Below are positions 1,376 to 49,612 of a DNA stretch of 64,000 bases, in pieces. The notes under the pieces are model-generated. The model was not told where the DNA came from. It saw only the letters and a list, made by a program, of their open reading frames with translations, and did not search any database. Within the stretch, counting starts at the first letter, position 1. Each line of letters opens with the position of its first letter. The DNA comes from Schmidtea polychroa. Taxonomy: Eukaryota. The translations under genes were made by a program, and so were the position numbers. The stretch covers positions 42,966,001 to 43,030,000 of the forward strand of contig CM097887.1 of the NCBI GenBank assembly GCA_044892525.1. The letters are read 5' to 3'.

Positions 1376-1567
1376 TTCTAAATCATTGATATAGATTAAT
1401 CTCTTTTTTAAAAAAAAATTTATTTATTGGTTACTGGCCCGTTGGAAATTTTTCGCATCATTTTTGGGTTTTCGTATTTAGGGTTTTTCATACCATTATT
1501 ATATAATATTTTATTGGATATATACGCCGATATATACAGGTTATTATATACAACATTATTCGATGGG

Positions 1568-2956: not shown

Positions 2957-3041
2957 TCTATAATTATATGTACATATAGTTCTTATCGATACAGGTTCGA
3001 TATTTTATTTAAAATTATTTACATTTTAAGCTAGGTTTGGT

Positions 3042-3401
3042 TTAGGGTTCGGAAGAGTCGGCTTCGTGTCCGCTCTCCTCTCTATTCATTAGCCATTCCG
3101 ACCAGTCTTCTATTTCTGTCTGTTCTGCTTCCTCCATCATTCTTTCTAGTTCAATTTCCTGTCTATGGCTATATTGGGTTATCCTCTCCATTTCTCTTTG
3201 CATTTGTTCGATTTTTAACCTCTGGTCTTCAATTATCTTCAAATAACTAAATCCTCTGTTCATACTCTCGATTAGGTTTCTGTGCATCGTCAGTCCTTGT
3301 TCTTGCAAATTGGACACTAATTGTGCTAATACGGCACATTGTTGCTTCCATAATTCTTCAGTTACTGTATTGTGGTTCATTTCGTTATTTCCTTGATCCA
3401 T
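3042..3401 (-). CDS. Accessory small coiled-coil/acidic protein (119 aa from the ATG at 3401)
   Basis: ORF track 3042..3425 starts at TTG; the first ATG is at 3399-3401 (MDQGNNEM...). Confidence 0.7.
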   Translation of the reverse strand: MDQGNNEMNHNTVTEELWKQQCAVLAQLVSNLQEQGLTMHRNLIESMNRGFSYLKIIEDQRLKIEQMQREMERITQYSHRQEIELERMMEEAEQTEIEDWSEWLMNREESGHEADSSEP

Positions 3402-3561
3402 TCTTAATTTATATCCACTTTTCAACTCTTATGTAAATTTAATTTTATTTTATGATTCCCGTTATTGTATAATATTGATACCGCGCTTATATAAAGATAT
3501 AGTACTGTTATATACATAAGATATACTTACTTTTTACAATTATATACAGTCATATTCCTTT

Positions 3562-4116
3562 CTATATACGTGAGTTTGGAGGGCGCTGAACGTTCCAGGC
3601 CTCCACCCACTGTTCTTGTTTGATATCACTTGGTCGTTTCACTCGATGTTGGAAGTTTCTGATTCGGGTCATTTCTAGTTCTCCGCGATGTCGTTTGTCT
3701 TTAATTATTTTTATTGTTCCCCCCGTTATGATTAGGAATGCTCCTGTTATTATTATCCCACTGATCCACATCATCTGCTTCACGCTTATACTCTCTGGTT
3801 TTTCCTTGTTTGTTAATGTTGATATTGCTTCTGTACTTTTCTCGTTCCCTCTTTTGCCATTCCCTTTCATCATCTCTCGTATTCTTGCTATTTCCTCGTT
3901 CATACCCTCCTTTGCCATTTTTTGTATTTTTTCCATCTCTTCCTCCGAAACATAGTTGTCCTGAGCTTCCTCGCCAGTTTTCTTGTGCTTTCCTCCTTCG
4001 TCCTTTTCGTCGTGGTTTTTCCTTTTCTTTCCTCTTTTCCCCGGGTATCGTCGGCATTCTCTTTTTGATTCGTATATTCCTTCGGGGGCTGCTGCTGCGT
4101 CACATATTGATGGCAT
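3562..4116 (-). CDS. Membrane-anchor ORF overlapping the polyprotein end in the -1 frame; probably its true C-terminus
   Basis: TM helix MMWISGIIITGAFLIITGGTIKII followed by a basic tail. One extra A in the A5 run near 4016-4020 would fuse it to the polyprotein. Confidence 0.7.
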   Translation of the reverse strand: MPSICDAAAAPEGIYESKRECRRYPGKRGKKRKNHDEKDEGGKHKKTGEEAQDNYVSEEEMEKIQKMAKEGMNEEIARIREMMKGNGKRGNEKSTEAISTLTNKEKPESISVKQMMWISGIIITGAFLIITGGTIKIIKDKRHRGELEMTRIRNFQHRVKRPSDIKQEQWVEAWNVQRPPNSRI

Positions 4117-7100
4117 CTCTCACCCGGTCCTAATCTTGAAATACAGACTTTGTGCTCTTTTCTTGGTTGGAGCTGCGTTATTACTACTTCGCCACCTTTT
4201 CCGAGGTGTACCTCTTTTCCTTTAACGTTCGTTATTCTTTTCCCGTCTCGATTTCGGTATGCTTCTTGTATTCTTACTTCTGTTATTGGTTCTGTGTCCT
4301 CATTTATCAGTACTAGTTTCTGATACGCTCTAGACATGCATCTTCCTAGTATGCACCTTTCCTTTAAGTCCCATTCTTCCTTTAAATCCCACTGCTGCTC
4401 TTGTGCTTGCTTTTTCTTTTCTTGTTTTAGTTCATCCTCTTTGCTATCTTGATTCTCCGCTTCTTTGGTTTCTTTTATCGTTCTCGTCCCTCCATGAGCT
4501 GTTACTAACTCTATCATGGTAAGCATAATTATCATTAATATCATATTTGTCTCTATTTCTTTGTTAGTGAAAGGTAGGCATACCCTCTGTTTTCCATTAT
4601 TCGGTTTTTCCTCCTCTTTGGTCTTGGTTCCCGGGCTGTTTCCCTCTCTTTTCGTATCCGAATCCTTGTTTTCCGGTTTATCCTCCTCCGGTTCTCTTTT
4701 CTCTTTATCCTCCTTTCGGCCTTTTCCGTTATTGTCATCGTGTTTATCTCCCCCGCTGTCGTTTAAAATGTCGTCCTCGACATTTATATCGTTCAATAAT
4801 CTGCGATATGCTGTTAGCACTCTGTTTCTTGCTAATTTTGCTTCGAATTCAAACTCCTTTCTGCCCGTTGCAGCGTGTCTCTTTCTATTCCATTCTTTGA
4901 CTAATTCTCTTAATTGAATGCGACGATGTTTCCCAATTCTTTGTTGCTCGCTCTGATTTTGCGTGAATTTGAGGTCTTCTCTGTTTAGTACTATTAAAAT
5001 AATTTTTGGTGTCCCCCCTTTAGTTAATGTATTCTTTACCATCGCGTTTTCTCCGTTTTCGTAGAATTCGTTTATATTTATCGCATATTTATTACTTTGT
5101 GGTATTCTCCATGTTACTAATAATTTCATTGCTTCCAGATTTTTCCGTACCGTATTCCACTGAAATTGAGATGTGTTTTTGCATATATTTTCAACTTCTT
5201 CTTTTGTCGCATTTTTGCAAATGAATCTGATCATTTCTAAGTTTGGCTGTATGGTTGCCCAGTCCAAGGTGGAATTTCCTTCATTGGACCTTTCGTCTAG
5301 TCTCGATCCCGATTGATGTAGTATGTGGAGTGTTTTTGGGTGTATTTTCGTTATAGCTGCATACATCATGGCGGTTTCGCCTTGTTCATTTTTCGTGTTG
5401 GTTTCCTCGCCCATATCTCCAAGGATTCTCATGATCGTTATTGCTCTATTTTCTTTCGCTGCTAGTATTGCTTGTTGTAGGGGTGTTCTGGAATCCTTCG
5501 TTACCATCGTAAATGCTCGAGGCAAGAAGGTTTTGATTTTCCCGATATCTAAACCCGTGGTTTGATCTCTTGCGTATGTATGTACAGCTTTTATTATTTT
5601 TGACAATATTATTTCGTCTGACAACTCTAGCATTTCCTCAAAGAATACCTCTTTCGCTTTGCGTATTATTGCCTCCTGATCTATACTCATTGATTTTGTT
5701 TCGATGACGTTATTTGTGACCTTTTGGTTCGTTGTCAATTTTGGTTCCCTTGATTTCCCATACCTTATTTTCGTTTTCTTTCCGTTTGGATTATTGATTC
5801 GTTCCTCTGCTGTAAGTATTTGGATAATATCCAGGTAATTCTCGCGGATGTTATTCATTGTGTCCATCATATATAACACACTTACCGTTTCCCAATATTT
5901 ATTTCGTACTTGGTTAGTAAATTGGAATAGGGATTTTTCGAATGTGTCGATTCGCTTTTTTGCTAACTGTTCGTCTTTATGATTTGTGAATTTTATCCCT
6001 CGTTCTAGTAATTGATTCGGAATTTCGAATAAATGATGTCCTTTCATAGCTTCTCTCATCAGCGTGTTCTCTCCTCTCGTGAACGCTTCGTTTACGTTGA
6101 TCATATAATCGTTTTGAATTGGATTTCTCCATGTAATTAATATTCCGGTAATTGTTGTCAGTTTTTCTTTGATCGCTGTTAATAATCCATCATACATGTT
6201 TCCGACTTCCCGATTGTCCTCATATGATAGTAGTTCCATCAATGACGTGAACGCCTCGGTGCTTTTCCCTTCGATAGCATGATGTAGTGCATTTTTCCGC
6301 TCGTGGTCTTGTGTAGTTATTTTTGATCCAGTATCAAGTAATGCGGTTATAATGTCTTTGGTTTTTCCTGTGTTTGCTGCTATCATTAATGGTGTGTAAC
6401 CTTGGTTGTTTGTTTGTTCTGTTGATCGCTTGCAGTCGTGAAATGCTTCTATTGTTTCTAGTATTAGCTCGTTGTTACCTACTTTCATGAGTTTGTGTAA
6501 TGGTGTGTCTCCGTAATGATCTGTTATTGTAAATAATATCGGCCATTGGCTTTTGACTACTCGCAATAACGGATGTGTCCTCTCTCTGTTCGCATAATTT
6601 TCGATCATCGTCAATAATCCTCCTAATATTTCGAAATCTAATCGATCTTTTGCCCATCCAGGTATTTTAATTTTTACCTCTTTTACAATCTTTTCTGCTT
6701 CTGATGGTTGGATACCCAATCGTCCGGTGATCGGTTCTGCGAGTTGTTGCATCATGTTCATTCTGTATGTTTGCGAACGTGTGGTTAATGTTCGACCTTC
6801 TGGTTGACTGGTGGCGGTTTTTGGAATTGATTTACATCGTGCCACGTTCACGTATATTGGCCTGGTGAATGGATTATTTATCAATTTCACTCTTACATTG
6901 GTTTCGCCTACGAATAAGATCTCATATGGTCCTTTTCCGTTGCGTTGTAACTTTTTTGTGGTTCCTGGAATTAATTCCGGGGTTTCTATCATTACCCAAT
7001 CACCTGTTTGAAACGTATGTTGCTTCACGTTTTTCTTTCGATCGTGTAAATCTTTATAACTTTCCTGGTAGAACTTGATATTTAATCCCGCAATTTCCCA

Positions 7101-10100
7101 AATTTCTTGCATTCTTTCCTTGAATTTCGTAACATAATCGTCGATCTCCATATACTGCGATATCGGTGGTTGGTATTCCAGGTCCATTGGCATGTTGCAC
7201 TTTCTTCCGTACATTAATTTAAATGGGCTCATTTTCGTTGATGCATGAATTGACATTCTGTATGCCATAAGACATAGGTTTATATATTCGTCCCAATCTC
7301 GTTGGTGACGATCGACGTAGTTTGATAACATTTGTATAAGTGTTCCATTAAATCTTTCCGTCATCCCATTGGTTTGAGGGTGGTATGGAGATGTTCTTAG
7401 CTTTGCTATTTTGAAGTAATTTGTTACTTCGTTCATTATTTCACTCATAAAATTAGTTCCCTGATCGGTTAATATCTGTTTTGGTGTTCCGTATCGGCAG
7501 CATATCTCTTCTACCAAGATTCTTGCGATTGTTTTAGCTTTTTGGTCTGGCATCGCGAATGCTTCTGGAAATTTCGTAAGAAAGTCTGTGATCACCAGAA
7601 TGTAAATATTTCCTTTATCTGACTCTGGTAGTGGACCAACTACGTCCATGGATATCATTGTCATTGGTTCTATTGGTACTGGCATTGGCGTTAAAGGTGC
7701 TTTCCATTTCGATCCAGTATTCTTCCTGGTTGCACAAGTTAGACAATTTTTTACCCATTCGGTTACATCTTCAGTTAACGTAGGCCAAAAATATTTCTGC
7801 TTCATTCTTGCTAACGTCTTTTTCGATGACATATGTCCTCCCAATCTCCCATCGTGATATTGCGTTAGTAACTCTTTTCGTCGGTTTTCCGGTATACACA
7901 TTAATCGTTTTTCCCCATCCATTATCAGCAACCAATCTTTCTCTATAATATATCGGTGTCGGTGTTTATCCATATGTTCTTTTAATTTTTGGTCTTTCGC
8001 ATATACATCTGTCTTTCCGGTTTTTACATAATCGATAATTTGTTTTAATTCCGCGTCCTCTTGTTGGTCTTTTCGCAATTGACAGAAATCCAAATCTTCC
8101 GCTACTATTAAGCATATGCGTTGCATTTCGGAATCCACCAACTCTGGAAAAATAAATCTTGACATACAATCGGCGTTGGCATTTGCTCTTCCCGCTTTGA
8201 ATTTTATAAATGGGGAGTATTCTTGCAATTGCATGGCCCATCTCATCAGTCTACTGGACGCTTCTTTATGTTGCCCTAACCACACCAATGGTTGATGATC
8301 TGTGGTTATACATATCTCATGTCCCCATAGTAAATATCGGAAGTGTTTGATAGCTTGTATTATAGCCAATGCTTCCCGTTCTGTTACCGAATAGTTCTTT
8401 TCATGCTTTTTGAATGTTCGGCTGTAATACCCGATTACTCTCTCTTTTCCTTCATCGTCTAATTGTCCCAGAATCGCACCTGCCGCGTACCCGCTTGCAT
8501 CCGTTGCCAATAGAAATGGCTTCTTAAAATCTGGGTGTACTAGGATAGGTGCTTCGATTAGTTTATCTCTCAGCGTTTCAAACGCCTCTTGTTGTTCCTT
8601 CCCCCAAATGAACGAAATGTCCTTCTTTACTAATTCCTGGATTGGTTTTGCAATTCCTGCATAATTTTTGATAAATTTGCGATAGTATCCGCATAATCCT
8701 AGAAATTCCTGAACTTGGGTGACCGTTTTCGGTGCTGGACATGTTTTTATTTTCTCAATGTTTCTTGGATCTGGCTCCTTTCCTTTAGCTGACACTATGT
8801 GTCCTAAAAACGTGACTTTTTCCTTTGCCCAATCGCATTTTGATGGTTTGAGTTTGAGTTTCCACTGTCTTAATCTAATAAATACGTTTCGGATATCTTC
8901 CAGATGTTGTTCAAATGTCGCTGAATAGATTAGTAAATCATCAATATATACCATACATTGTTTGATTCCATGAGTGACAAAGTTCATACACCGTTGAAAT
9001 GATGCTGGTGCGTTGGTCAGTCCGAATGGCATTTTCCTGAATTGATATAGATTTCGTCCCAACGTGAAAGCTGTTTTCTCTTTGTCCTCATCTTTGACTT
9101 TAATCTGCCAGTATCCACTTTTTAGATCTAAAGAAGTAAAATATGCTGCCCCTTGCAACATCAATAACATCTCATTGATGTCCGGCAATGGATAGGTATC
9201 TCTCTTGGTTACTGCGTTTAACTTCCGATAATCGATACAGAATCGTTGGGTGCCATCCTTCTTTTTCACCATGACCACTGGGAATTGCCAAGGTGAGCAA
9301 CTCGGTTCGATTACTTTTGCGTCTAGCATCTTTTGTACTTCTGCTTCGGCTATTTCTTTTTGCATTTCTGCTAGCTTGTATGGTCTTAATGCAATTGGAG
9401 TTTCATCTATGAGGGGTATTGCATGTAGGGTAACATCGCATGTACCCAAATCTAAATCTGAGATGGCGAATATATCTTTATATTCCACCAACAATCGGTG
9501 CAATTTTTTCTTTTCATCATTCGTCAACAACATACTATCTATTGTCCATAATTCATCATCTTTGATCATCTCGTTGGTCACTTTCGGTAATTCTATGTCC
9601 ATCATTGGGGTCAATCTTCCCAATTTTTCGTTCTCATAAATGATTTTGTCTTCTTCTTCGAAATTCGTGATGTTGAGCGGTATCACTCCTTCTTGGTTTA
9701 TTGTTATTATTTCCCTTGCGAGTGGTAACTCTCGTCGCTTTTCGAATGATTTGCTTGGTTCAAAGATAACTTCTCCTTCCATACCCGTATCCACTTTTAT
9801 CTGACAAATCATCTGTGATTTTGCTGGTACTATTATTTTTTCTGGACATCTGATTACTGCATTCATTTTGCATATTCTACCGGTTTTGTCTTTTAGACAC
9901 ATAGTGGTTAAGTCAATTACGACTTCTTTTAACAATTCTGGCATCAGGTCCGTTCCGATTATGCATGGTACGCTAAGTTTTGGTATTACTGCCAAATACG
10001 TTTCAATTTCGTTGTCCTGGTATCTCAAAGTAGTCCACCATCTTCCGACCACGTCCACTGTTTCTTTACTACATGCTATGATGTGAATTGTTGTTGATTC

Positions 10101-13100
10101 GATATCTTTCCAGTGTTTACTGGGGATTTGATTAATCGCTATCGCTGATACATTAGCTCCTGTGTCTATCATGGCATTGGTTTCTTTACCATTGATTTGG
10201 ATCATGACTGTTACTGCTGGACCTCCAGGTAGACTCATCGCTGCGATTGTTCTTACGTCATCTGCTTGATCTACACTTTTGGTACGTCGTGTCGGCATAT
10301 AATGCATACCGGGTTGACTCAGTAATTGCGGATACATATTTTGTGTCATGGTCAAAGCTGCTTGTGGTCCCACGATATCCGGTGGTATGTAGCTTCCATT
10401 GGCGATCCAGGTATTTGTCTTTTCCTTTTCCCAATATGGTGCCGTTTCCATTGGTTTTTCGTTTGGGTTTCTGTTTGGATATAGACGTTTATCGTTCCCG
10501 TCATCATCGTCGTCACTATCGCTGTTAGATGATTGGCTTCTAAATCGGTCCAAGAATTTTGGCTTATTCTTTTTCAATTGTCGTCTTGTTGCTTCATCGT
10601 ACATTACTTTCCGGAATCGTCTGCCCACTTCCTCGTCGGTTCCTTTAATCTTCGTTAGTATTTTAATCAATCGCTTTATCCGATGAATGTCTTTTGAGTG
10701 ACCATGTAATACCATGGTTTTAGCTAAAAATGGTAAGAAACCTACTATCATTTTCCAGTTAACTTTCTTTTCCCGCTTGTATATATCGAAACAAGCTAAC
10801 ATTTGTGTTAGTATTACTCTAACTATCTGAATTATGAGTATGATCCCTAATATCCCGGCCATCATTTGTCCAAAAACTAAGAATCTTCCCCACATTGCTT
10901 TCATCATGTTTGACGTAGCTTGTTGAAAATGGTCTGGCGATAATAGCAGCTCGTAATTCGGGCCTGATTGATAGTTTGTGCCCCCAGTTATTGTTACCAT
11001 ATTAGACAAAATGGATTCTCGTCTGGCTGGGAAGAGTACGTTAAGTCGTGCTGTTTCTAGATCTTCTGGGGAATACATACCACCGTTTGACACGTCTATA
11101 GGTTTGAAATCCAGCTCTGTGGCGAGTTCTATTAATCCAAATTTCTTGGGTTCCTCGGATATGGTTTTTCCCGGTAACATCATCCATTTCCCATCGGGTC
11201 TTTCATACAAAGGTCCGTATGCATTAGAACAGTTAAAGAGATTTGGGTAGAAACCCACTGGATTCATAATTCTAGTGACTGGTTGGACGAATCGATTTTG
11301 TCCTTTATAACGAATTTCTAATTCATTTGCACATCTCTTTTCGGGTAGTATGGATTTTTCTGGCATTCGTGCATACGTCTTGGTACACTGGTATGTGTAC
11401 ATCACTTCTCCTACCATTCTACCAAAATGTCCGTCTGGTAGTGGGAGTGATGGCATCGTGTTATCGGGGTGCGTTATCGCAATAGCTAGCTTTGTTTTCA
11501 ATATTTCTTTATTCAATGAACAATCGTTTTGTATCAGATCGTAATATACTTTTTGCAGGGTCGTTTGTCCACGATGAAATAGAAAATCCATTTTATTATT
11601 TGCATATAAGTATAGTTTTACGTCCTCCGTTGCTATCTTTCCCACTGCTCTATCGATTATTTGTCTCGACATATAGATACCAGCGTAATTGGTTTTATAT
11701 ACTATACTGTCACATTTGGTGGTTTCTTTCTCTTTGATAAATCTCATACCTAGATCTAGATCGTCTGTGATTAATGCTGTTGGTGTCTTCTGCGTTGAAA
11801 GTCTCTTTTCTCTGGGAGATGGTGGCATTGGTTTTCCATTTCGCATTCTCACTCTGTCGTTTCCATCCTCGTCGTTCTCGTTCTCATAAATTTCTCCTTT
11901 TACTTCATTGAACAAAGCACTTTTTAACAGTTGGAGTCGGCATTTTTGGGTATTAGCATCATAGATTATAGTTGATACTCCTGTCCTGCATACGTTTTCT
12001 GTAGCTCTACATGCTGGGTTGGTCTTCATTTGATAATTATTTGCGTCAAATTGCGCTTCGTATTCCTTTAGTTCAACCGTATAGGACTCGATCACTACTA
12101 CTCCCGATATTACCTCGCCTCGGATCGTATACGTACCTCCGTTACATGACCCATCTGATGATTTTACTTTTCCGGATACGTAAACACTTTCGGTTTTAAT
12201 CATTCCAGTTTGTCCGTGAATCGTCACTCCGTTATGCATTTTTAGCGCTCCGGTTCTAAATAGCTCTTTACAGTCCTCTCGTTGTATTGATACGATTTCT
12301 TTATCCAGACCGGGTAGTATAAGAGTCGAATACGAATATTGTCCACAGTAATATGCGAGTACCTTTTTTGATACTACGCATTCCCTTGCTTGCGTTCTGA
12401 TGAAATCTGATTCTTGATATACATGGTAAGTAACTTTTGTTCTCACGATGTCCAATTTGTTGGGTGAGGCTTGTCTGCATTCTTCTATGTCTCTCAATGA
12501 GTATTTATCTCTCATTATCATATTATCACAATCGTAGATGGTAAAACCTGTTGCTCCACTTGTGCACAACATCCATATCATCATAGTCATCATTAACGAA
12601 TTTATTGATGCTTTTCTGCTTGCGGGATCTTTCATCGGTAGTTCCCATTCTAGTTCATTTAACAGTTTTTTCAATCTAACTTGCATCGACCTTTCTTGCT
12701 CATTTTTTCGTGGCGCTTGTATCAGTCTTTTCCATCCTCCTGCACGAATAATATGTGGTTCAATAGTATTCTCTATGATTGAAACGGTCATTTCCACATG
12801 ATTTGCAAACTGTTTATTTGGTATTTTCCTCGCAGCTAGTCCCATCAAATTATACATCAAATACGTGATTACCACTAGATGATGTTCGTCATCATTTGCA
12901 TTTGTCGTGAGCTGCTCAATCACTCTCTTTGTTTCGTCCCAATCCGTTTTGGTGGTTTTCGTTTTCTCTTTGATTAACTTTGGGATTATCCCCGAAATGG
13001 TGTGCCATAATTGTCTAGCTTCCGTGCTGGCTACTTTCCGTTGCCACAAACGTCTAAGTTGTGGGTTTGTTATTATTAACATATCTTTTAACAATTCTCG

Positions 13101-16100
13101 TATCCATTTTTCTCCTCTTTCGATCGTTGGTTGGGCTTCCTTTAGATCCCATACTATTTTATCCAATTTTTCTAATCGAACTTGCCCTTGTTCTTGCTTT
13201 AATTGTTCTTTGGTTTTGAACTCAGACTTTTCTCCTTGTTTCTTAGGTCTTCCTTTTGCCCGTTTTTCCATCATCGTTCCGGCTTCTCTGGTATTTTCGT
13301 AATTCGGATTTCTTTCGTTGTCCGTTCTGGGTAATGAGCTATCGTTATTTCTTAGCCACTCATTCCATTCGTCTATTATTTTATCGGTTTGACCTTCTGG
13401 TGTTACTTTCGTTGGTTCTCTTTGCTTCTGGAATTGTTCATCCGTTTCGGTTTCCGTAGTATTGTCGATGATTTCTTTGATGTTCAGTTTCGTTGGTTGT
13501 TGATAACTCGTTGATGGCTGGTTATTAGTCCACATTTCGGCTCCTGTCGGCCATCTCACTAATAGCGGTGATCTTTCTCCTGGTTCATCGTCACTATCTT
13601 CCAGGATTATCTCTTCAACTTCTTCAGTTTCATTAGATTTACTTGGAGCTTTGTTCGGACTTGGAGTACTCAAACTGCCTTTTGTTGGTTTAGTAATTTT
13701 ACTTTTCCTTTTTAACGGTTTCCCCAACGTTTCCGCCATTGTTAATACATTTGTCTCTTCCAATCTCATGGGTGTTATCCCGACGTCTGCATTATCGTCT
13801 AGTGATTTTCCGAACAGTTGTAGATGGAATGGAGTTTCATATGCTAATTTCTTTTTTAATTCTCTAATTTTTGTTGTTGGATGCACCTCTAGTTCTTCGA
13901 TGCTCTTGTCCGGATACTTGATTCGGATGTGATACCTCTCCTGAGTGTCTTGTGCCCATTCCTGATTTCTCCATTTTCGAATAATTTGTTCCAGCTGTTC
14001 TGGATACCATTCATTATATTGCCGGTATTCCTCTATTGCCTTTGCCATTTCTCTCAGATTGTGGATATTCTCTGATGTCTTTAGGATGATATTAGCCAAC
14101 GCTACCACCTGGCGTTTTTGATTTTTCGCTCCCATTGCTAAAATATCGCCTAATTGTTTATATCTTTCTTTCTCTTCTCGCTCTCTTGCTTCAATTGCTT
14201 CCTCGCCGTCCATATCGGCATATTCTCGTTCCTTTTTCCTCATTGCATGAATATGTCTCGCTTCATTTTCGCTTTCTGATGTGACATCCGTCTCGCCTTC
14301 GTCATCTGATGTCTGTTCCCTTGCTTCCTCTTCATATTCTGGAGGTTCCTCTTCTTCTTCCTCCGATTCACTTTCTGTCTCACCAATGTCTGTTTCTACG
14401 AAGATCCCTTTCCTGATTTCCCATTCCTTATTTTCTGCATTCCACACTCTTTCCCATGGGGTTCGTCTGCAGGATCTGGTATTTAATTTCGTGATTTTTC
14501 CTTGTAGCTCCTTTTCTTTTAACCATTGTTGGTGGATTTCAATTATTTCTGTAGATTTTTGATATAACGTTTTCATCCGGTCTCGTATTTCTTTTTGATA
14601 GGTTACATCTCTTGTTCGGAATTCATCCATTGGTACTATCCTGATTATCTGATGATTGTCCCACATACCCATTTCGCTTAACGAGGTGTCGTCCTCCGCT
14701 CGTAATATTATTTTGTCGTACATCATGACTACATCATCCACCATACCATCACTACTTTCGCTACGTACCTTTTCCGTTATCTCTTGGTTTATTTTTGATA
14801 CCAAGTCATCTACTGTACTCTGATTGCTCATTTTTATTCGTCGTTTTTCTTCGTTCGGTAACCATATGGTTATTTCCAACCTCTGTGGCTGGGTTTCTTT
14901 TAACCTTCCATATTTGTGGATCAAATTTATGGTTCTCCAATCACTCATCCGGAGCATTTCTGTATCTCGCAATCGGCTCATTAGTTCGTACATGGCTGGG
15001 GCTCGTCTGGTGATGAGTAAATCCCAGTTGTCTTCTACTTGTTCTTGAATTTGTTTGATCAGCTTATCCAGGTTTCGTCTCAGAGTACATTGTTTTATTT
15101 GTTCTAATTTCAATTTGATATTAAAATCATATTCTGCCTTGGCATCTTTAGCCCAATCGTAAAGGTTGGCTGGTTGTTTTTCTTTGTGCAACTTTAGTAT
15201 TTGCGTTTCTCCTGGCCATATTAGTGCATCTACTAAGTGCATATCTGGTTTGATCTGTTCTCCTTGGTATTGATACAGATATTCTTTCTTTCTCGAACTT
15301 CCCAAATGTTCTCGTATCCAATCGAAAAGTTCGTCGGTGACTGTATTTTTTATCCACATTCTTTCAAGTCCTCTACTCGTTCCGATTTTTATTACATACC
15401 GCGTGGTATCGGCCTGCTTCATTTTTTCCATATACTTTTTTATAATTGATTTTTCCTCGTTTGGTATTAGATCTTTCTCGTTTCTTTCCAATTTCATCAC
15501 TTTTTGCACGAATCGCCTGAATGGAATTACGTCGATGAACTCTTGGTTCCTCACTACTACTGGGAGTATTTCGGCTACCTGTTTTATCGCTTCCTCCCTT
15601 GCTTTTCTCAACTTTATCTCGATATCTTCGTCTTCACTTTCACTGGTTATCTCGTTTTCGCTTTCTTCCTCTTTGATTTCCCCTTTTGGAGGTTCGCTTA
15701 TTTCATTCAGCTGTAGTATTTCTCCACCCAAACTACTTACATAGTCTTCTTCTTCGTCTGACGATGCTACATCTTTTATCCTTTTCATCATATTGATTTG
15801 CAAGTTTCTCATCCTTGGTACTCTCTTTAGTTTCTTTCTTTCGAATATTGTTGTTTCTTCTGATTCTAATTCTTGTAGCATTTGGTGGTTTAGTTGACTG
15901 GTTTGTTCCTTGCTCTTGTTATTTTCATCTTCTGTCGCGGCTTTCGCTTTATTATGTTCTTTTTCGATTTTATCTTTTATCTTTTTCCAGAATATTTTCT
16001 GAATTCTCTGGTTTCCTTTTAAAATCGTGGTTGAATTCTCTGTTTTCATTTCCGTTGTTGTTTCTGTTACCTTTTCTGGTTCAGTCATGGGTACTACCCT

Positions 16101-17396
16101 TGGGTTTTTTCCGTAATTGTAGCAATACTGGCTTTTCATGTCTTTTACTAACTTCATCATATTAATTCGCAATGGTTGTTCTTGTCGTTGTTGGTTGCGT
16201 TCTTGTTTTATCCTCTCTTCCTCGGCCTGTAGTCTTTGCCATTCTTGTACATGTTGATGCACTTCGTAATTGTTGAGATTTTCGGTACTTCTCATCATAC
16301 GTATATTCTGGGTTTGTTGTGGTGCTGATTCGGGTCTTGGTCTCATCATTTGTTGCATCATCTGTTTCATCTGCGAAATTTCCTGCATAACGTTCATTTG
16401 TTTTCCTTCGTTAGGGTTACTTTGTCGTTGCGGATTCGCTATATAATTATTATTTCGCTGTGGTGGTCGTTGTTGTTGACCCCTTTCTCGGCAATCTCTG
16501 GAGATGTGACCTGGCTGACCACAGTTAAAACAACCTCGCAATTGGCATACATTTTCGGTATGTCCACGCCGTCCGCAACGATTACAATTTGAATTTCTAT
16601 AACAATCTCTGTCCCAGTGTCCTGGTTTACCGCATGTTCGGCACTGCTTGTTATCGTTCATATTTCGTCGATTATTGAAATTGTTCTCATTATTCGGGTT
16701 GTTACGATTACCATTATTCCCATTTGATCGTCCTTGTGGTGGTTTGAAAATTTGGTGCGCTCCTGGTATAAATTGATTCATTTTCGGTTCTTGATGGTTG
16801 TTATCTCCGTTATCCGCTTTCGCTATTGCTGTCGCTATCCTTCCCTCCTCTTGCATAATATTCATTTGAGCTGGAAGGTGGAGCTCGCATCTTGTAGCCC
16901 AATCTATGGCTTCCTCTAATGTTTTGCACATTTGACACCCTACTGAGGCTCTTACTTCTTCTCGGCGTAATCCCTCTATGAAATAACCGATCAAATTTTC
17001 TTCTGGTAATTTCCCATTCATTGCTTTCTTTGCCAATCTCCGCAATTCGCTGGCATATAACGTAATGGATTCATTTGCCCTTTGTTTCCTATTTGCTAGT
17101 TCGCCGAGTGCTTGATTTATTGGTTTGCTAGCTCCGAAAGTTTTCTTCAGGAATGTTTTGATATCTTCCCACTTCTCTAATTTCGTATCTCTCTCTTTAG
17201 CTTCTAAATATACTTCTAATGCACTATCGCACAAAAACAACGGCATCCTTTTACTAATTGCTTCGGGTGTCCATCCACACACAGTGATATAAACTTCAAA
17301 ATTAGTTATGAACGTTGCTAGCTTGTTTGCATTTCCATTGAACGGTTCTCCTCGGAACTTTTCTTTATACTCGTCGGTTTTTACGACATTCGTCAT
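3900..17396 (-). CDS. gag-pol: 4498-aa Gag-UBLx3-Bcl2-Env-PR-dUTPase-like-RT-RH-IN-ANK-FN3 polyprotein
   Basis: 13.5-kb open frame with a Retrotrans_gag-like N-terminus, 3 CCHC knuckles, MIDTGA, YIDDLL, ATDAS, H-H-C-C zinc motif, D-D-E triad and GPY motif. Confidence 0.97.
   Translation of the reverse strand: [4498 protein letters not shown]
5100..6540 (-). other. Two ankyrin-repeat modules C-terminal to integrase
   Basis: [64 protein letters not shown]. Confidence 0.9.
6765..8100 (-). other. Integrase with HHCC zinc motif, DDE core and GPY/F module
   Basis: [10 protein letters not shown]...CLTC; [36 protein letters not shown]. Confidence 0.96.
8160..9400 (-). other. Reverse transcriptase and RNase H
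   Basis: [51 protein letters not shown], YIDD (8937-8948); FLLATDASG...[11 protein letters not shown]...TDHQPL...NADCMSR. Confidence 0.97.
9870..10230 (-). other. Aspartic protease
   Basis: [19 protein letters not shown] (DTG at 10158-10166) and CIIGTDLM. Confidence 0.95.
10250..12605 (-). other. env: Env-like class III fusion glycoprotein (chuvirus/gB-like) embedded between Gag and protease
   Basis: Signal peptide [23 protein letters not shown], 14 ectodomain cysteines, motifs [26 protein letters not shown] and [13 protein letters not shown], then [30 protein letters not shown]. Confidence 0.85.
12720..13170 (-). other. Bcl-2-like domain within the polyprotein
   Basis: [19 protein letters not shown] matches the BH2 pattern (Bcl-xL YLNDHLEPWIQENGGWDTF), with a gap-free alignment back to the BH1 position. 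Confidence 0.7.
13730..15405 (-). other. Three ubiquitin-like (beta-grasp) domains (~15185-15405, ~14625-14885, ~13730-13940), each preceded by a helical block
   Basis: UBL3 [29 protein letters not shown]...[10 protein letters not shown] aligns with ubiquitin IFVKT...LEVEPSDTIENVKAKI...LIFAGKQLED. UBL1 and UBL2 keep the same pattern more loosely. Confidence 0.7.
16491..17396 (-). other. gag: Gag: capsid domain plus three CX2CX4HX4C zinc knuckles (16491-16643)
   Basis: EPFNG...FITNFE...W...[10 protein letters not shown]...[12 protein letters not shown]...[17 protein letters not shown]...FIEGL; knuckles [28 protein letters not shown] and [14 protein letters not shown]. Confidence 0.95.
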
Positions 17397-18773
17397 GATT
17401 GGTGTTCTAGGTTCGTCTGTTTCTTTTAAATTGTCTAACGATGTGACTAAACTTTGGGCTGATAATTCCTCGGTTGACGTTGCTAAACTATTAGTGATAT
17501 CGGACAGACTTTCTCTACTTCGAGATCGACTAGGGGTATATCCGAGATTTTCTTGGTCAAATATGGGTACTTGATTGGTTCTTCTTGCTCCTTGTGATAT
17601 TCCTCGTTGATGTTTAATAGATCGTCCTCTTTTGAGTTGTTGTAATTCGTCTCCTGAAAATAATACGTCTCCTGGCTTACTTGAAGATCTAAGATTGGGT
17701 TTATCCGTGATTCCTTTCTTACGCTTCTTGGTAATTAGCGGCTATTGAATTGGACGAGTTCGGTTCTGATTGTGCTTCCTTCGATAAATATTCTGTATGA
17801 ATCTGCTACTGAGATCCTGAGGAGATTTACTAATCCTTGGCAGATGGCTGCTAATACTATGAGGTTGAATATATCGATGATTCGTTCGAAGTTGGAGATG
17901 TCGCTATCTGTATCTTCTTCCGTTCTGGAGTCTTCCGGTTGCTGTGTCTCTCGGTGCGGGTTCTGAATGGATTTATCCTTGGTTGATTGTCGATTTCTTC
18001 GAATTCCTTTTGTGCAGGTTCTGGATTGTCTTGGTTGACTGGATTGGCTTGATATCTAAAATGAAAAAATGATCTCGTGTTGCATTTGCTTACACGACTT
18101 CATCATTCTTTCAACAACATTTGAACACAGACACCTTTTAGGTTCTGTTTATGCTTCCCCTATTTTTTTTTTTTTTTTTATGCAATTACTTCCGCGGGTT
18201 ATAATCTCCCATCAGCCCGTATTTTCCGTCGATTTTAAATTATCTATATGGGGTAGTAACAATTATCTATAAAGTCGTAATAATTATCTATTCGTTATCA
18301 ATTATAGTAAAAATAGGTCGTTGTCGGTCTCTGCTTATTACCCCCCTTCGTTTTCTTATTCCTTTGCGCTGTTGTCGCTGTTTTACTTTTCATATTTACT
18401 ATTATCCCACTCGGTTCTACTCTGGAACCGATAAAAATACATTTTCCCGGTTTACCCAAAAAAAAATTCCGTAGAGTTTCTCTACTTCACTGGGATCCCT
18501 TTAATTAGCTAGTTACTTTCTTCTTCTACTCATTATCTCCATTTCACCTATTCTTTATTTTCTCATTATTTCTTTAATTCATTTTCTTCTTCTCCTTCCT
18601 TTTTCATTATAATTTTATTATCTTTTCCCCGAGCTCGTTTATTTCCTCTCTAAACTCAAATTTTCGTAATTATATTCAATTTGTTTCTAGCTAGCTTTAA
18701 TATTCCCTTTCTCTATTAATTTTAAATATTATCTCATTGTAGCTTAACTGCTATTTCTCATTTTTCTAGGCCT

Positions 18774-19146
18774 TTACGACTGGCTGGCACTATTCCACAG
18801 CTCAATCTTCTTCCTTCTGATCGGTTGGACTATTCAACAACTCGATCTTACGACTGGCTGGCACTATTCAACAGCTCAATCTTCTTCCTTCTGATCGGTT
18901 GGACTATTCAACAACTCGATCTTACGACTGGCTGGCACTATTCAACAGCTCAATCTTCTTCCTTCTGATCGGTTGGACTATTCAACAACTCGATCTTACG
19001 ACTGGCTGGCACTATTCAACAGCTCAATCTTCTTCCTTCTGATCGGTTGGACTATTCAACAACTCGATCTTACGACTGGCTGGCACTATTCAACAGCTCA
19101 ATCTTCTTCCTTCTGATCGGTTGGACTATTCAACAACTCGATCTTA
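18774..19146. repeat. Tandem array: 5 copies of a 74-bp unit in the element leader
   Basis: Units start at 18774, 18848, 18922, 18996 and 19070, with a single variant base in copy 1. Each unit is a diverged dimer (ggctggcactattcaacagctcaatctt / ggttggactattcaacaactcgatctt). Confidence 0.98.
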
Positions 19147-19701
19147 ATATTCCCCGCTCTGCATGCTTCTACTTCTCTTTTCTTCTTTTACCCTAGATTA
19201 CCATTTTCTCTGTCTACTTTTAATTTGTCGACTTAATCTTTACCGCTTGAGAGTGTTTCCCCTTTCCCCCCTTGCTCGAAACGCACGACGATAGCGATGA
19301 TCCGTTTCCACATTGGTATGGTGATCAGTCATGCCGCAGAAACTTCTCATCATATGCGATGGTACCCCGCCCTACGCTTCTTACTTGGGTTGATCAGTTA
19401 TCCCCTCCCAACGGGTTCTTGCAATAAAACGTACCGCCCGAAGGTGGCTCGGTTTGTACCCCTGCAGCCTATATTGGGACTAATTCCACGTTAGTTTTAT
19501 TCTTCTCCATTCGATCTCATAACCAAAGATATAATTAAAAGAGATAAAATATCTAATTCATAACAACAAAAAAATTTTTATTTATTCTGAGACTAAAATT
19601 AAACATTAAAGTTATTTCACACTTAAAAGTACATATATTCGTATTCAAAGGTCTTTTAACAATTTAGTGCGCATATACATCACTGCATCTGGTTAGTCGT
19701 T

Positions 19702-20187
19702 TTAATCACCGTAATAAACCATATGGGTTTCTTTTATCCCATTTTTACATATTGCACATCGTTTCAGATCTTTCACGCACTCTTCACAATGACTGAGGTG
19801 TCCACAAGGTAAGAATAGTATGCGTATAGGGCGAAGATTGCAAGACAGACAGGTTCGCAATTTGGTGAGTTTCTCTTGTATCTTTTGTTCGATTGCCTCT
19901 GATATTGTATGTAGTTGATCTTTTATTCGCTCGTATTCTAGATTTAGGGCCGGGTTTTTTAGTCGTTTTAGGTACCATTGGTATACTGTTTCTTGATTTA
20001 TCTTTTCATCTGAGTGGCTTAAACCTGCGGCCAATAACACGTGATTAGGTACGACTGGTGTATGTCCGATTGCTTGGAGTAGAATGCTGTTGATTCGCTT
20101 TCTTTTTTGTATGAGTGTTCTAATAGGGTCGTTTTCTATATTAATGAAATTGACTAATTGTTGTATCTGTTCTGCGAATTCCGTCAT
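19702..20187 (-). CDS. Accessory protein with C-terminal IAP/MDM2-type C3HC4 RING (161 aa), located between PBS and gag
   Basis: CLSCNLRPIRILFLPCGHLSHCEECVKDLKRCAICKNGIKETHMVY at the extreme C-terminus. A strong acceptor-like tract precedes the ATG. Confidence 0.88.
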   Translation of the reverse strand: MTEFAEQIQQLVNFINIENDPIRTLIQKRKRINSILLQAIGHTPVVPNHVLLAAGLSHSDEKINQETVYQWYLKRLKNPALNLEYERIKDQLHTISEAIEQKIQEKLTKLRTCLSCNLRPIRILFLPCGHLSHCEECVKDLKRCAICKNGIKETHMVYYGD

Positions 20188-20459
20188 GTCTATTGGGAAA
20201 AGGGAAAAAAAAAATTTTTTTAAATAATATACAGCTAATTAATGGTTATTTCATCAAACATTTTTCTTTTTAAATCGTTATAATTTATTTTGTTTTTATT
20301 CTATTTCCCTATTATTTACTTTATTTATATCTTTAATTCTATTATTTTCTAATCGTGATTTATAATAAGATTCGATAGGCATTAGTCAATTTACATTCGC
20401 CCACTAATTGAAATCGATAATCCCGGTGAATTCACATTATTCGACAGAAATTCCATAAT

Positions 20460-20477
20460 ATCCCTGCTGAGCCCCCA
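20460..20477 (-). promoter_or_regulatory. Primer-binding site, tRNA-Pro-like
   Basis: Minus strand TGGGGGCTCAGCAGGGAT matches 15/18 positions of the MLV tRNA-Pro PBS TGGGGGCTCGTCCGGGAT. Confidence 0.75.
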
Positions 20478-22255
20478 AAAATTATGCTGGGGTAGTGCTT
20501 GGTTGACTCTGCTCAATCTACGTCCTTGTCTAGGGGGTGCGTGCCCATATCATTACGCTACATACGCCCGTGTCAACCCGGAGCAGGACCCCGCACAACT
20601 TGCCCTCCAACATAGCACCCGCGAATTGCTTCACGTTGGAAATGTGCTATGTCGGCGAGACTCCAGTAAGCAGGTGAGCCCCTACCTTAGGACTACTCCT
20701 TACTGAGGCCTCGACTTCCCTTTTCTGACGGCCGATGGAAGGACTTACGTCTGTTTACCTCATCAGATTCTCCCTCTACCCTGACCCATTATTCGGCACA
20801 AAATTGACCACTGCCTCTCGAACTCAAACTTTACTCTCGCTTTGCGAACGCTACGCTGAACCTTTGTCACAGCTAGTTAGATTTAAACAACAACAAAAAT
20901 TTAACCAAATATTTCTTTATTTTATTATCATGATACATTAGAGAATTATACACTACATAACGAGTACACTTGGTGGAGAATAGATTAAGAAGAAAAAGAG
21001 TCAAGATAGTTTATTTGTCCATTCGCACCCTGCACGGTTGCATTGTGTTGCGGCCATCACTTCTCCCACCCCGCATCCGCCAATAGCTCCTCTAGATCAA
21101 AAAACTCGGAGGCATTCTCCTCCCAAGTCACACCAGCGGCAGATATGATTCGCCCTGGGATTCCTACGGTCAGATCGATCGTTACGGGTGGATCATTCGA
21201 AGCACTTAGGTGGTTGGCAGATAGTTCTCGTTGTTTGACCATTGCTCGTTCACGTTGGCGCTTTTTACGCTCCGCTCTGGACAATTGGCGGCGCTTAGGT
21301 TTTGAGGGGTTGGCAGACAAGATTGCCGAGGACGTCGTGGCTGAATGCAATACCTTGCCAGTGCCGGTAGTAGGTACGTCCGATGGCCTGGGGGAGAGGT
21401 CGGCCTCCACACATTCCTGACAAGATCTTTTCGACAAAGGTGGCGAACTAAATGAAGGTTCATGGTGAACGGGGAAGACATTGTCCGCTTCTTTAATCGG
21501 AATACTAACAATCCTTCGGGTTGTAGCGGCTTGAACGTAAACTTTATGTAGAGCTTCGGACTGCTCTTTGATTAGGCTACGCTGAGCTCTACTTTCGCTT
21601 ATCAAAGCATCGCGACAATGCTCACTGCGGTACAATTTCTTTTGAACTTCCTTCATTTGTACTGGGCTAAACCATGTACTTTCCAGATCGTCGATCTTCT
21701 TTTTATATCGACCGACCTGGGCCTGTAATTCTCGGATTACGGTATTTTTATCCGAGCAGGAGAAGCAGGGTTTGATGGGCGATTTCGTGCTTGGCAACAT
21801 CTTTTGATAGCTGTAATGAAGAAAGAATAATGGAGATAAGACGAAAATTGGCTAGCTCTACTAATCTATCAGAGTAGCGTAATTATTTATTAAGGCTCAT
21901 AAATTCCCTACATCACATTCATGGGTTGAAATGACCGACAAGAAGAAAACGGAATGACTGTTAGCGAAACTTCCTGTTGATCGATATTACATCCGTAAAG
22001 TAATTCATAGGTTTACGGGTTAACAAATTAATTCTCCCCCCCCCCCCTTTTGCCCAACATGATAATTTGATTGCGGATTAGGAAAACTTGTCAATACATG
22101 AGCGTGACCAGATTCGACTTTACTATCAGCAAAACAATTCAGACAGGTGCAATACATCGGGATAATAAATTAATTAAAAGATTTGAGTTTATTCGCGATT
22201 ATAATACTCTAATTTGAGTTAATAGTAAATGCGTGCGATTACAAAAAACTTTACA
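20478..22255 (-). repeat. Putative 5' LTR (boundaries unverified)
   Basis: Lies immediately upstream of the PBS; AATAAA at ~20921-20926 (minus); candidate TG starts at 22025, 22243 or 22255. No second LTR is in the window for comparison. Confidence 0.45.
21057..21800 (-). CDS. 247-aa ORF inside the presumed LTR: CxxC, coiled coil, basic NLS-like stretch, acidic C-terminus
   Basis: Open frame preceded by acceptor-like ttctttcttcattacag; contains KPKRRQLSRAERKKRQRER and EFFDLEELLADAGWEK. Confidence 0.65.
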   Translation of the reverse strand: MLPSTKSPIKPCFSCSDKNTVIRELQAQVGRYKKKIDDLESTWFSPVQMKEVQKKLYRSEHCRDALISESRAQRSLIKEQSEALHKVYVQAATTRRIVSIPIKEADNVFPVHHEPSFSSPPLSKRSCQECVEADLSPRPSDVPTTGTGKVLHSATTSSAILSANPSKPKRRQLSRAERKKRQRERAMVKQRELSANHLSASNDPPVTIDLTVGIPGRIISAAGVTWEENASEFFDLEELLADAGWEK

Positions 22256-47278: not shown

Positions 47279-47489
47279 NNNNNNNNNNNNNNNNNNNNNN
47301 NNNNNNNNNNNNNNNNNNNNNNNNNNNNNNNNNNNNNNNNNNNNNNNNNNNNNNNNNNNNNNNNNNNNNNNNNNNNNNNNNNNNNNNNNNNNNNNNNNNN
47401 NNNNNNNNNNNNNNNNNNNNNNNNNNNNNNNNNNNNNNNNNNNNNNNNNNNNNNNNNNNNNNNNNNNNNNNNNNNNNNNNNNNNNNNNN
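47279..47489. other. Assembly gap (N run)
   Basis: Run of n characters. Confidence 1.
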
Positions 47490-49468: not shown

Positions 49469-49612
49469 NNNNNNNNNNNNNNNNNNNNNNNNNNNNNNNN
49501 NNNNNNNNNNNNNNNNNNNNNNNNNNNNNNNNNNNNNNNNNNNNNNNNNNNNNNNNNNNNNNNNNNNNNNNNNNNNNNNNNNNNNNNNNNNNNNNNNNNN
49601 NNNNNNNNNNNN
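49469..49612. other. Assembly gap (N run)
   Basis: Run of n characters next to an (AAT)n repeat. Confidence 0.95.

What the first reader, a model, noticed from the sequence alone, without database searches (positions are those of the whole stretch)
12720..13170. Bcl-2-fold domain in a retrotransposon polyprotein
Seen: the 53 residues DEHHLVVITYL...IIENTIEPHIIRAGGW align without gaps to Bcl-xL NWGRIVAFF...YLNDHLEPWIQENGGW (aligned from memory). BH2 is retained, but the BH1 NWGR is replaced by DEHH. Established: poxvirus Bcl-2-like proteins lacking a canonical groove (A46, A52, B14, K7) block TLR/TRAF/IKK signalling, while others block apoptosis. Inference: a viral-type Bcl-2 mimic; I know of no such domain as standard LTR-element cargo.
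Basis: partly seen in the sequence, partly recalled or inferred. Interest (0 to 1): 0.85.

Follow-up and report, generated by a model that had tools for sequence, protein, structure and literature searches.

The report
Bcl-2-like domain in Burro retroelement
The flagged stretch is probably a diverged Bcl-2-like helical domain inside the 4,498-residue polyprotein of a giant, Burro-type retrovirus-like element of a planarian-like genome; this cargo domain has already been published for Burro elements, so it is unusual but not new.

Summary
The quoted residues are there, on the minus strand, at residues 1503-1555 of one uninterrupted 4,498-codon ORF (window 3900-17396). The ORF reads Gag, three CCHC knuckles, ubiquitin-like stretches, the candidate domain, an in-frame class III-type viral fusion glycoprotein, PR, RT, RNase H, IN, ankyrin repeats. 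Accessory ORFs encode a TRAF-like protein and an IAP-type RING.

This matches the published giant Burro LTR elements of the planarian Schmidtea mediterranea. A BCL2-like motif between a SUMO-like domain and env is already reported for them (PMC6431247, citing Grohme 2018 and Jurka 2007).

My own tests of the Bcl-2 fold all point the same way, but each is below significance:
- Pfam Bcl-2 is the best family hit (E 0.028, 15.4 bits against a cut-off of 31.4).
- A single-sequence AlphaFold model (pLDDT 57) has eight helices.
- 43 of its 50 best PDB matches are Bcl-2-family entries, nearly all Mcl-1, but the best E is 0.22 and TM stays below 0.5.
- No PDB chain matches by sequence, and no homologues were found to build a profile.

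Verdict: probably a real Bcl-2-like cargo domain. Its function is inferred only (cell-death or signalling control, possibly membrane-anchored by the env signal peptide). Already known.

The parts
320..23800 (-). Visible part of a giant Burro-type Ty3/gypsy retrovirus-like element. The 5' side fades into AT-rich host DNA near 23.8 kb. The 3' side probably runs off the start of the window, and no LTR pair lies within it.
   Evidence: About 39% GC with a strongly A-rich minus strand, against 26-30% GC in the flank. No long direct repeats in 1-30000. Domain content.
3900..17396 (-). Single uninterrupted 4,498-codon polyprotein ORF: Gag, CCHC x3, ubiquitin-like stretches, Bcl-2-like domain, Env, PR, RT, RNase H, IN, ankyrin repeats.
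   Evidence: the ORF listing; Pfam.
16962..17243 (-). Retrotrans_gag domain (residues 52-145).
   Evidence: Pfam PF03732, E 3e-9.
16491..16643 (-). Three CCHC zinc knuckles (residues 252-302).
   Evidence: Pfam zf-CCHC, E 7e-10; pattern count.
13824..14900 (-). Stretch containing ubiquitin-like (beta-grasp) looking segments (about residues 833-1191).
   Evidence: Weak Pfam hits only: PI3K_rbd E 0.0024, ubiquitin E 0.02-0.06. A Ubi2/SUMO-like motif is reported at this position in Burro.
12717..13190 (-). Candidate Bcl-2-like domain (residues 1403-1560), modelled as eight helices. DEHH is at 12879-12890, the central hydrophobic helix at 12831-12890, and GGW at 12732-12740.
   Evidence: Pfam Bcl-2 E 0.028, below threshold. 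AlphaFold models. Foldseek list led by Mcl-1. Hydropathy.
12543..12599 (-). Moderately hydrophobic segment (residues 1600-1618) read as the internal signal peptide of Env. It lies 44 residues after the GGW motif and is a possible membrane anchor for the preceding domain.
   Evidence: Hydropathy maximum. It aligns with the hydrophobic segments that precede the conserved YDC motif in relatives P0002-P0004. The Pfam fusion-protein profile starts here.
10776..12599 (-). Env: a mononegavirus-type (Monjiviricetes) fusion glycoprotein, in frame between gag and pol. Its hydrophobic anchor is at residues 2169-2206.
   Evidence: Pfam PF24664, E 1.2e-69 and E 1e-26 for the N-terminal part; hydropathy.
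9933..10208 (-). Retroviral aspartyl protease.
   Evidence: Pfam RVP, E 2.8e-9.
8793..9269 (-). Reverse transcriptase.
   Evidence: Pfam RVT_1, E 1e-35.
8217..8606 (-). RNase H.
   Evidence: Pfam RT_RNaseH / RT_RNaseH_2, E 6e-39 / 4e-37.
7377..7895 (-). Integrase (H2C2 zinc-binding domain plus catalytic core).
   Evidence: Pfam Integrase_H2C2 E 4e-20, rve E 2e-12.
5223..6458 (-). Two blocks of ankyrin repeats in the post-integrase tail.
   Evidence: Pfam Ank_2 E 2.6e-16, Ank_4 E 1e-6.
1568..2956 (-). TRAF-like accessory gene (RING, Cys-rich region, coiled coil, MATH). It is read as two same-frame pieces with one in-frame stop.
   Evidence: Pfam zf-C3HC4 E 1.7e-4; TRAF-mep_MATH E 2.3e-26.
19702..20187 (-). 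Accessory ORF upstream of gag with an IAP-type C-terminal RING.
   Evidence: Pfam zf-C3HC4_3, E 6e-11.
18700..19220 (.). 74-bp tandem repeat array in the leader between the RING ORF and gag.
   Evidence: the repeat finder family D1. Tandem repeats are drawn in published Burro maps.

Best explanation
The stretch is the BCL2-like cargo domain of a Burro-type giant Ty3/gypsy retrovirus-like element. It is a diverged, roughly 158-residue all-helical domain (residues 1403-1560), most likely derived long ago from a cellular Bcl-2-family gene, and now a fixed part of a Gag-cargo-Env-Pol polyprotein.

Shown here:
- its position in the ORF;
- an intact reading frame;
- base composition matching the rest of the element;
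- an eight-helix prediction with a central hydrophobic helix;
- Bcl-2 family as both the best sequence family and the best structural family, though neither is significant.

Inferred:
- The domain is made on the cytosolic side, directly before the internal signal peptide of Env.
- Cleavage of that signal on the lumenal side would leave the domain held at the ER membrane by a C-terminal hydrophobic segment. That is the same topology as tail-anchored cellular Bcl-2 proteins, and is analogous to the capsid-anchor arrangement of flavivirus polyproteins.
- There it would modulate host cell-death decisions in cells that express the element, alongside the element's other host-like cargo (TRAF-like gene, IAP-type RING, ubiquitin-like and ankyrin domains).
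For: Architecture identical in kind to published Burro elements:
- one ORF of 4,498 codons with Gag, three CCHC knuckles, an in-frame mononegavirus-type Env (E 1e-69), PR-RT-RH-IN and ankyrin repeats;
- MATH/TRAF and RING accessory ORFs;
- AT-rich host flank;
- PMC6431247 reports a BCL2-like motif between the Ubi2/SUMO-like motif and env in Burro elements.

Support for the fold:
- Pfam Bcl-2 is the top family for the piece. It covers 74 residues on 74 profile positions and ends at GGW.
- The trimmed single-sequence AlphaFold model has eight helices and pTM 0.50.
- 43 of its 50 best PDB matches are Bcl-2-family entries, nearly all Mcl-1. The best has probability 0.85, and alignments span 114-151 columns.
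- The first, poorer model also drew Mcl-1, Bax and Bcl-xL into its top 50.

Support for age and topology:
- Composition equals the rest of the ORF: A 41%, third-position A 45%.
- The two hydrophobic maxima in residues 1381-1640 are the central helix and the signal segment.
Against: No single test is significant.
- Pfam scores 15.4 bits against a cut-off of 31.4, and noise hits of similar E occur nearby.
- No Bcl-2 chain was found by sequence in the PDB.
- Foldseek's best E is 0.22, TM is 0.38-0.49 and rmsd 6-8 A. The models have low confidence (pLDDT 50 and 57).
- The many Mcl-1 entries in the PDB amount to one resemblance counted many times.
- The viral structure library gave nothing.
- No homologue of the domain was found among 1.84 billion representatives, so no profile or alignment-based model could be made.
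- The three related polyproteins have an acidic low-complexity spacer where this domain sits.
- Cleavage, anchoring and any effect on cell death are inference only.
Confidence: 0.7

Rival explanations
1. The domain has the Bcl-2 fold but no working BH3-binding groove. It acts like the poxvirus Bcl-2-like signalling inhibitors, interfering with TRAF- or NF-kB-type innate signalling rather than with the mitochondrial death pathway.
For: The same element carries a TRAF-like gene, an IAP-type RING ORF and ankyrin repeats, which suggests a signalling-directed cargo set.
Against: I could not verify the column equivalence of DEHH with BH1. The retained GGW and the Pfam match to the cellular family profile point to a cellular-type origin. 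The best structural matches are cellular Mcl-1, not poxvirus proteins, and the viral structure library gave no match. There are no data on partners.
Confidence: 0.12
2. Chance resemblance: the stretch is a lineage-specific helical spacer between the Gag-side cargo and Env. It is not related to Bcl-2 and does not share its fold.
For: Every statistic is below threshold. Ribosomal_L17 hits the same piece at E 0.045. Relatives P0002-P0004 have a non-homologous acidic spacer at this place. Low-confidence helical models tend to match helical bundles.
Against: Two different methods pick the same family as their best match. The Pfam match is co-linear over 74 positions and ends at GGW. Domain length, helix count and a buried central helix all fit. 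Independent published annotation reports a BCL2-like motif at this place in several Burro families.
Confidence: 0.15
3. The domain is a Bax/Bak-like, membrane-permeabilising Bcl-2-fold domain that promotes, rather than prevents, the death or lysis of expressing cells.
For: There is a hydrophobic central helix and a downstream hydrophobic segment.
Against: The best matches are to pro-survival Mcl-1. An integrated element with an Env for budding gains little from killing its cell. Burro1 RNA is described in live differentiated cells (PMC8532177).
Confidence: 0.03

Closest known systems
Burro elements (Burro1 = GYPSM1; Burro-2, -3, -4) of the planarian Schmidtea mediterranea, and Burro-like elements of other Dugesiidae (Grohme et al. 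2018; Jurka 2007; Arkhipova & Yushenova 2019, PMC6431247)
   Same: Giant gypsy-like element with one enormous ORF. Gag with three CCHC knuckles. A BCL2-like motif just before an in-frame mononegavirus-type env placed between gag and pol. Ubiquitin/SUMO-like, ankyrin, MATH_TRAF and RING-type cargo. Tandem repeats. An AT-rich host genome.
   Different: The ORF here has 4,498 residues, against 4,873 reported for Burro1. MATH/TRAF lies in a downstream accessory gene here, not inside ORF1. I found no BIR and no dUTPase-like match. Which Burro family or species this copy belongs to could not be tested, because no reference sequence was available.
Cellular Bcl-2 family (best structural match: Mcl-1)
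   Same: A helical domain of about 150-160 residues with a central hydrophobic helix, a GGW motif near the C-terminal end, a downstream hydrophobic segment, and the best Pfam and Foldseek family matches.
   Different: It is below every significance threshold. The BH1 signature is not recognisable. The domain is embedded in a polyprotein rather than being a free tail-anchored protein. Groove and BH3 binding are unknown.
Viral Bcl-2 homologues of large DNA viruses (herpesviruses, poxviruses, asfarvirus and others)
   Same: A host-derived or host-like Bcl-2-fold domain carried by a mobile or viral genome, alongside other host-manipulating cargo such as ankyrin repeats and RING/IAP-like proteins.
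   Different: The carrier here is a reverse-transcribing LTR element and the domain is part of the Gag-Env-Pol polyprotein. No match to viral structures was found.
GAG-ENV-POL errantivirus-like Ty3/gypsy elements of Platyhelminthes, Nematoda and Bryozoa with class III fusogens (PMC13524379)
   Same: Env placed between gag and pol, with a class III-type fusion glycoprotein.
   Different: That paper, as searched, does not mention Bcl-2-like or other apoptosis-related cargo. The element here is several times larger.
Flavivirus/hepacivirus capsid followed by an internal signal peptide (a works-like comparison only)
   Same: A cytosolic polyprotein domain directly followed by the signal peptide of the next, lumenal glycoprotein, which can serve as a transient C-terminal membrane anchor.
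   Different: There is no homology. Cleavage here is inferred from sequence alone.

Membership tests
Bcl-2 family (Pfam PF00452) | Match to the family profile at or above the curated gathering score. | tested here: not met
   15.4 bits, E 0.028, against a cut-off of 31.4. It is the best family for the piece but at noise level.
Bcl-2 family / Bcl-2-like fold | Globular bundle of about eight helices around a central hydrophobic helical hairpin, superposable on solved family members. | tested here: inconclusive
   Single-sequence AlphaFold gives eight helices, pLDDT 57, pTM 0.50. In Foldseek against the PDB, 43 of the top 50 matches are Bcl-2-family (Mcl-1) entries, but the best E is 0.22, TM is 0.38-0.49 and rmsd 6-8 A.
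Bcl-2 family | BH1 signature at the start of the central helix. | tested here: inconclusive
   The residues capping the central hydrophobic helix read DEHH, so no canonical signature is visible. Column equivalence could not be checked because no profile alignment is printed.
Bcl-2 family | BH2 signature containing GGW near the end of the domain. | tested here: met
   GGW lies at residues 1553-1555 and coincides with the last positions of the Pfam profile match. A three-residue motif is weak evidence by itself.
Bcl-2 family | Hydrophobic groove that binds BH3 helices. | not testable with these tools
   The models are too uncertain and there are no homologues for a conservation analysis.
Bcl-2 family | C-terminal membrane anchor. 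| tested here: inconclusive
   A hydrophobic segment 44 residues downstream (residues 1600-1618) is also the Env signal peptide. Whether it stays attached is unknown.
Burro-type giant LTR elements | A single giant ORF (more than 4,000 residues) beginning with Gag and CCHC knuckles and containing PR-RT-RH-IN of Ty3/gypsy type. | tested here: met
   4,498 codons without a stop; the Pfam domains in that order; three knuckles.
Burro-type giant LTR elements | A mononegavirus-type env in frame between gag and pol, preceded by the BCL2-like motif. | tested here: met
   Monjiviricetes_fusion, E 1.2e-69, at residues 1600-2207, directly after the candidate domain. Description in PMC6431247.
Burro-type giant LTR elements | Apoptosis/ubiquitin-type cargo: MATH_TRAF, RING/BIR, ubiquitin/SUMO-like, ankyrin. 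| tested here: met
   MATH E 2e-26, RINGs, ankyrin E 3e-16, weak ubiquitin-like hits. BIR and dUTPase-like domains were not found.
Burro-type giant LTR elements | Long terminal repeats, total length above 30 kb, and nucleotide identity to a named Burro reference. | not testable with these tools
   Only one side of the element is in the window and there is no repeat pair. No Burro reference sequence was available.

The most novel reading that the evidence does not exclude
The Bcl-2-like domain is a working, tail-anchored cell-death regulator. It would be produced co-translationally when host signal peptidase cuts the Env signal peptide out of a retroelement polyprotein. It would act together with the TRAF-like, IAP-RING, ubiquitin-like and ankyrin cargo as a host-manipulation module of the kind otherwise known only from large DNA viruses. 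As far as I could find, the anchoring-by-signal-peptide mechanism has not been proposed in the papers read here.
Probability: 0.25. Interest if true: 0.6.

Novelty: already known. Interest (0 to 1): 0.3.

Why it matters
Reverse-transcribing elements normally carry only gag, pol and sometimes env. A retroelement that carries a Bcl-2-like domain together with TRAF-, IAP-, ubiquitin- and ankyrin-type cargo shows that LTR elements can collect host cell-death and signalling genes as large DNA viruses do. That bears on how planarian cells, including stem-cell progeny, tolerate thousands of such copies. The existence of the domain is already in the literature. What remains open is whether it really has the fold, how it is released from the polyprotein, and what it binds.

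Tried and rejected
- **Pairwise sequence search of the PDB** with three piece sizes found no Bcl-2-family chain.
- **Exhaustive phmmer** of the domain against 1.84 billion representatives found only a repetitive bacterial protein, P0001. Its score sums nine repeats, so I rejected it as spurious.
- **Search for relatives through the Env region** found three long polyproteins from ENA contigs, P0002-P0004. Their pre-Env regions are acidic and low-complexity, give no Bcl-2 hit and do not align to the domain. They were useless for a profile.
- **The same search with a Bcl-2-plus-Env piece** among shorter proteins found nothing.
- **Metagenome and viral contig scans** found nothing.
- **A second copy in the window** was sought; only a 57-residue integrase fragment turned up.
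- **The viral structure library** gave nothing.
- **Grohme 2018 and the primer tables for BURRO1** are not held, so I could not confirm identity at the DNA level.
- **A dUTPase-like domain between PR and RT** was not found.
- **A recent host capture or an assembly chimera** was considered and rejected. The stretch has the same A-rich composition as the whole ORF and is in frame.


Full report
**What is at the coordinates.** The finding lies on the minus strand, inside one uninterrupted ORF of 4,498 codons (window 3900-17396).
- In that frame, DEHH occupies residues 1503-1506 and GGW residues 1553-1555.
- The first 22-24 kb of the window are about 39% GC, with a strongly A-rich minus strand. 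The rest is 24-33% GC. The ORF therefore sits in a compositionally distinct insertion in very AT-rich host DNA.

**What the ORF is.** Pfam places these domains in order:
- Retrotrans_gag at residues 52-145;
- CCHC knuckles, three by pattern, at residues 252-302;
- a long stretch without strong hits;
- a Monjiviricetes-type viral fusion glycoprotein at residues 1600-2207 (E 1.2e-69);
- retroviral protease, reverse transcriptase, RNase H and integrase;
- two blocks of ankyrin repeats.

Env has a hydrophobic segment at its start and a strong one at residues 2169-2206.

Further ORFs lie on the same strand:
- Downstream is a TRAF-like gene: RING, Cys-rich region, coiled coil, and MATH at E 2e-26. 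It reads as two same-frame pieces with one in-frame stop.
- Also downstream is a 351-residue coiled-coil ORF.
- Upstream of gag is a 161-residue ORF with an IAP-type RING (E 6e-11) and a 74-bp tandem array.
- No LTR pair lies in the window, so the element probably runs off the window start.

**It is a known kind of element.** Arkhipova and Yushenova (PMC6431247) summarise the giant gypsy-like Burro elements of the planarian Schmidtea mediterranea (Grohme et al. 2018; Burro1 = Jurka's GYPSM1). They describe:
- an ORF1 of 4,873 residues;
- Gag with three CCHC knuckles;
- MATH_TRAF_C, BIR and ankyrin motifs;
- an env with homology to mononegavirus fusion glycoproteins 'between BCL2 and PR', in frame between gag and pol.

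They state that a BCL2-like motif was noted in Burro-2, -3 and -4. The planarian genome is more than 70% A/T (PMC11410931). A GAG-ENV-POL order with class III fusogens is also reported for flatworm errantivirus-like elements (PMC13524379).

The window's element matches this description in kind. It differs in ORF length and in having MATH/TRAF in an accessory gene, and I found no BIR or dUTPase-like hit. I could not test identity to a named Burro family, because no reference sequence or primer table was available.

**Testing the Bcl-2 claim by sequence.**
- Pfam Bcl-2 (PF00452) is the best family for the 171-residue piece. Residues 1482-1555 match profile positions 27-100 of 100, co-linear, ending at the W of GGW.
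- The score is E 0.028 and 15.4 bits, against a cut-off of 31.4.
- Obviously spurious families reach E 0.017-0.05 on neighbouring pieces, and Ribosomal_L17 reaches E 0.045 on this very piece. The hit is therefore not significant by itself.
- phmmer against all PDB sequences gave no Bcl-2-family chain at E <= 10 for pieces of 401, 181 or 83 residues.

**Looking for homologues to build a profile.**
- An exhaustive phmmer search of 1.84 billion representative proteins found only a repetitive bacterial protein, which I reject as spurious.
- A search seeded on Env found three related polyproteins of 3,771-4,029 residues from ENA contigs. They are 37-39% identical in Env and about 43% in Pol.
- Where the window has the candidate domain, these relatives have an acidic, low-complexity spacer with no Bcl-2 hit and no alignable similarity.
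- A further protein search and scans of metagenome and viral contigs found nothing.
- The domain is therefore a lineage-specific insertion of the Burro lineage, and no alignment-based test could be run here.

**Testing by structure.** Only single-sequence AlphaFold was possible.
- Residues 1400-1580 gave pLDDT 49.7 and pTM 0.37. Its PDB matches were all non-significant, but Mcl-1, Bax and Bcl-xL chains appeared at ranks 3, 20, 22, 27, 30, 32, 39 and 41. The viral library gave nothing.
- Trimming to residues 1402-1562 gave pLDDT 57.3, pTM 0.50 and eight helices. DEHH caps the helix at residues 1503-1522, which is the hydrophobic maximum of the region.
- In Foldseek against the PDB, 43 of the 50 best matches were then Bcl-2-family entries, nearly all Mcl-1. 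Rank 1 had probability 0.85, and alignments spanned 114-151 columns.
- Even so, the best E was 0.22, TM was 0.38-0.49 and rmsd 6-8 A, with no match at E <= 0.001.
- Because the PDB holds very many Mcl-1 constructs, this is one weak resemblance counted many times.

**Weighing it.** Each line is weak. Two different methods choose the same family. Domain length, helix count, central hydrophobic helix and terminal GGW all fit. An independent published annotation places a BCL2-like motif at this exact position in several Burro families. I put the probability of a genuine Bcl-2-like fold at about 0.75-0.8. It is not shown to be a member of the Bcl-2 family in the Pfam sense, because that test was not met.

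**How it most likely works (inference).**
- The composition of the stretch equals that of the whole ORF, so it is an old, integrated part of the element.
- Gag and the cargo up to residue 1560 would be cytosolic.
- The segment at residues 1600-1618 has small residues at -3 and -1 before the mature Env start, and aligns with the signal-like segments of the relatives. It would insert into the ER membrane.
- Env would be lumenal up to its anchor, and Pol cytosolic again.
- Signal-peptidase cleavage would leave the Bcl-2-like domain with a basic 44-residue linker and a C-terminal hydrophobic segment. That is the topology of tail-anchored cellular Bcl-2 proteins.
- Together with the TRAF-like, IAP-RING, ubiquitin-like and ankyrin cargo, the likeliest role is control of host cell-death or stress signalling in expressing cells. 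Burro1 RNA is reported in live differentiated cells (PMC8532177).

**Verdict.** The feature is real and unusual for LTR elements in general, but it is already described for Burro elements, so its novelty is low.

- In my private reasoning I once began writing a short stretch of a human Bcl-2-family protein from memory.
- Also in my reasoning, I worked out where the single stop between the two pieces of the TRAF-like gene lies. That place is not listed in this report or in my notes.

Noticed in passing
window 1568-2956 (-): TRAF-like accessory gene of the element (RING, Cys-rich region, coiled coil, MATH E 2e-26). It reads as two same-frame pieces with one in-frame stop. In published Burro1 the MATH_TRAF motif lies inside ORF1 instead.
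   Followed up: partly
window 19702-20187 (-): 161-residue ORF upstream of gag with an IAP-type C-terminal RING (zf-C3HC4_3, E 6e-11). No BIR domain was found near it.
   Followed up: partly
window 320-1375 (-) and 21057-21800 (-): A 351-residue coiled-coil ORF and a 247-residue ORF, both without family hits and both within the compositionally distinct element.
   Followed up: no
window 18700-19220: Tandem array of a 74-bp unit (up to 99% identity between copies) in the leader region between the RING ORF and gag.
   Followed up: no
window 3900-7376 (-), residues 3341-4498 of the ORF: A tail of about 1,150 residues after integrase, with two ankyrin blocks, a hydrophobic segment (residues 4280-4304) and a very basic C-terminus. 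Most of it has no family hit.
   Followed up: partly
window 13824-14900 (-): Ubiquitin-like looking stretches between Gag and the Bcl-2-like domain (weak Pfam PI3K_rbd and ubiquitin hits). One region, residues 1092-1211, is shared with relative P0002.
   Followed up: partly
L001:1458-16390 and L002:144-12911 (ENA contigs ERZ2271605 NODE_44, ERZ2271731 NODE_53): Related Gag-Env-Pol polyproteins of about 3,900-4,000 residues. They lack Bcl-2-like, ankyrin and TRAF cargo, but carry extra aspartyl-protease-like domains and downstream RNase_T-type exonuclease ORFs. Their host is unknown.
   Followed up: partly
window 24872-26212 (+): 446-residue ORF with zf-BED and DUF4371 hits, probably derived from a hAT-type transposase, in the AT-rich flank.
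   Followed up: no
window 36073-38064 (+) and 46074-47231 (-): Long ORFs (663 and 385 residues) in the AT-rich flank with no Pfam family.
   Followed up: no
window 60408-60578 (-): A 57-residue fragment 40% identical to the element's integrase, in a locally GC-richer patch. It is probably the remnant of another gypsy-like element.
   Followed up: no
window 47279-47489 and 49469-49612: Two runs of N. They were left as they are.
   Followed up: no
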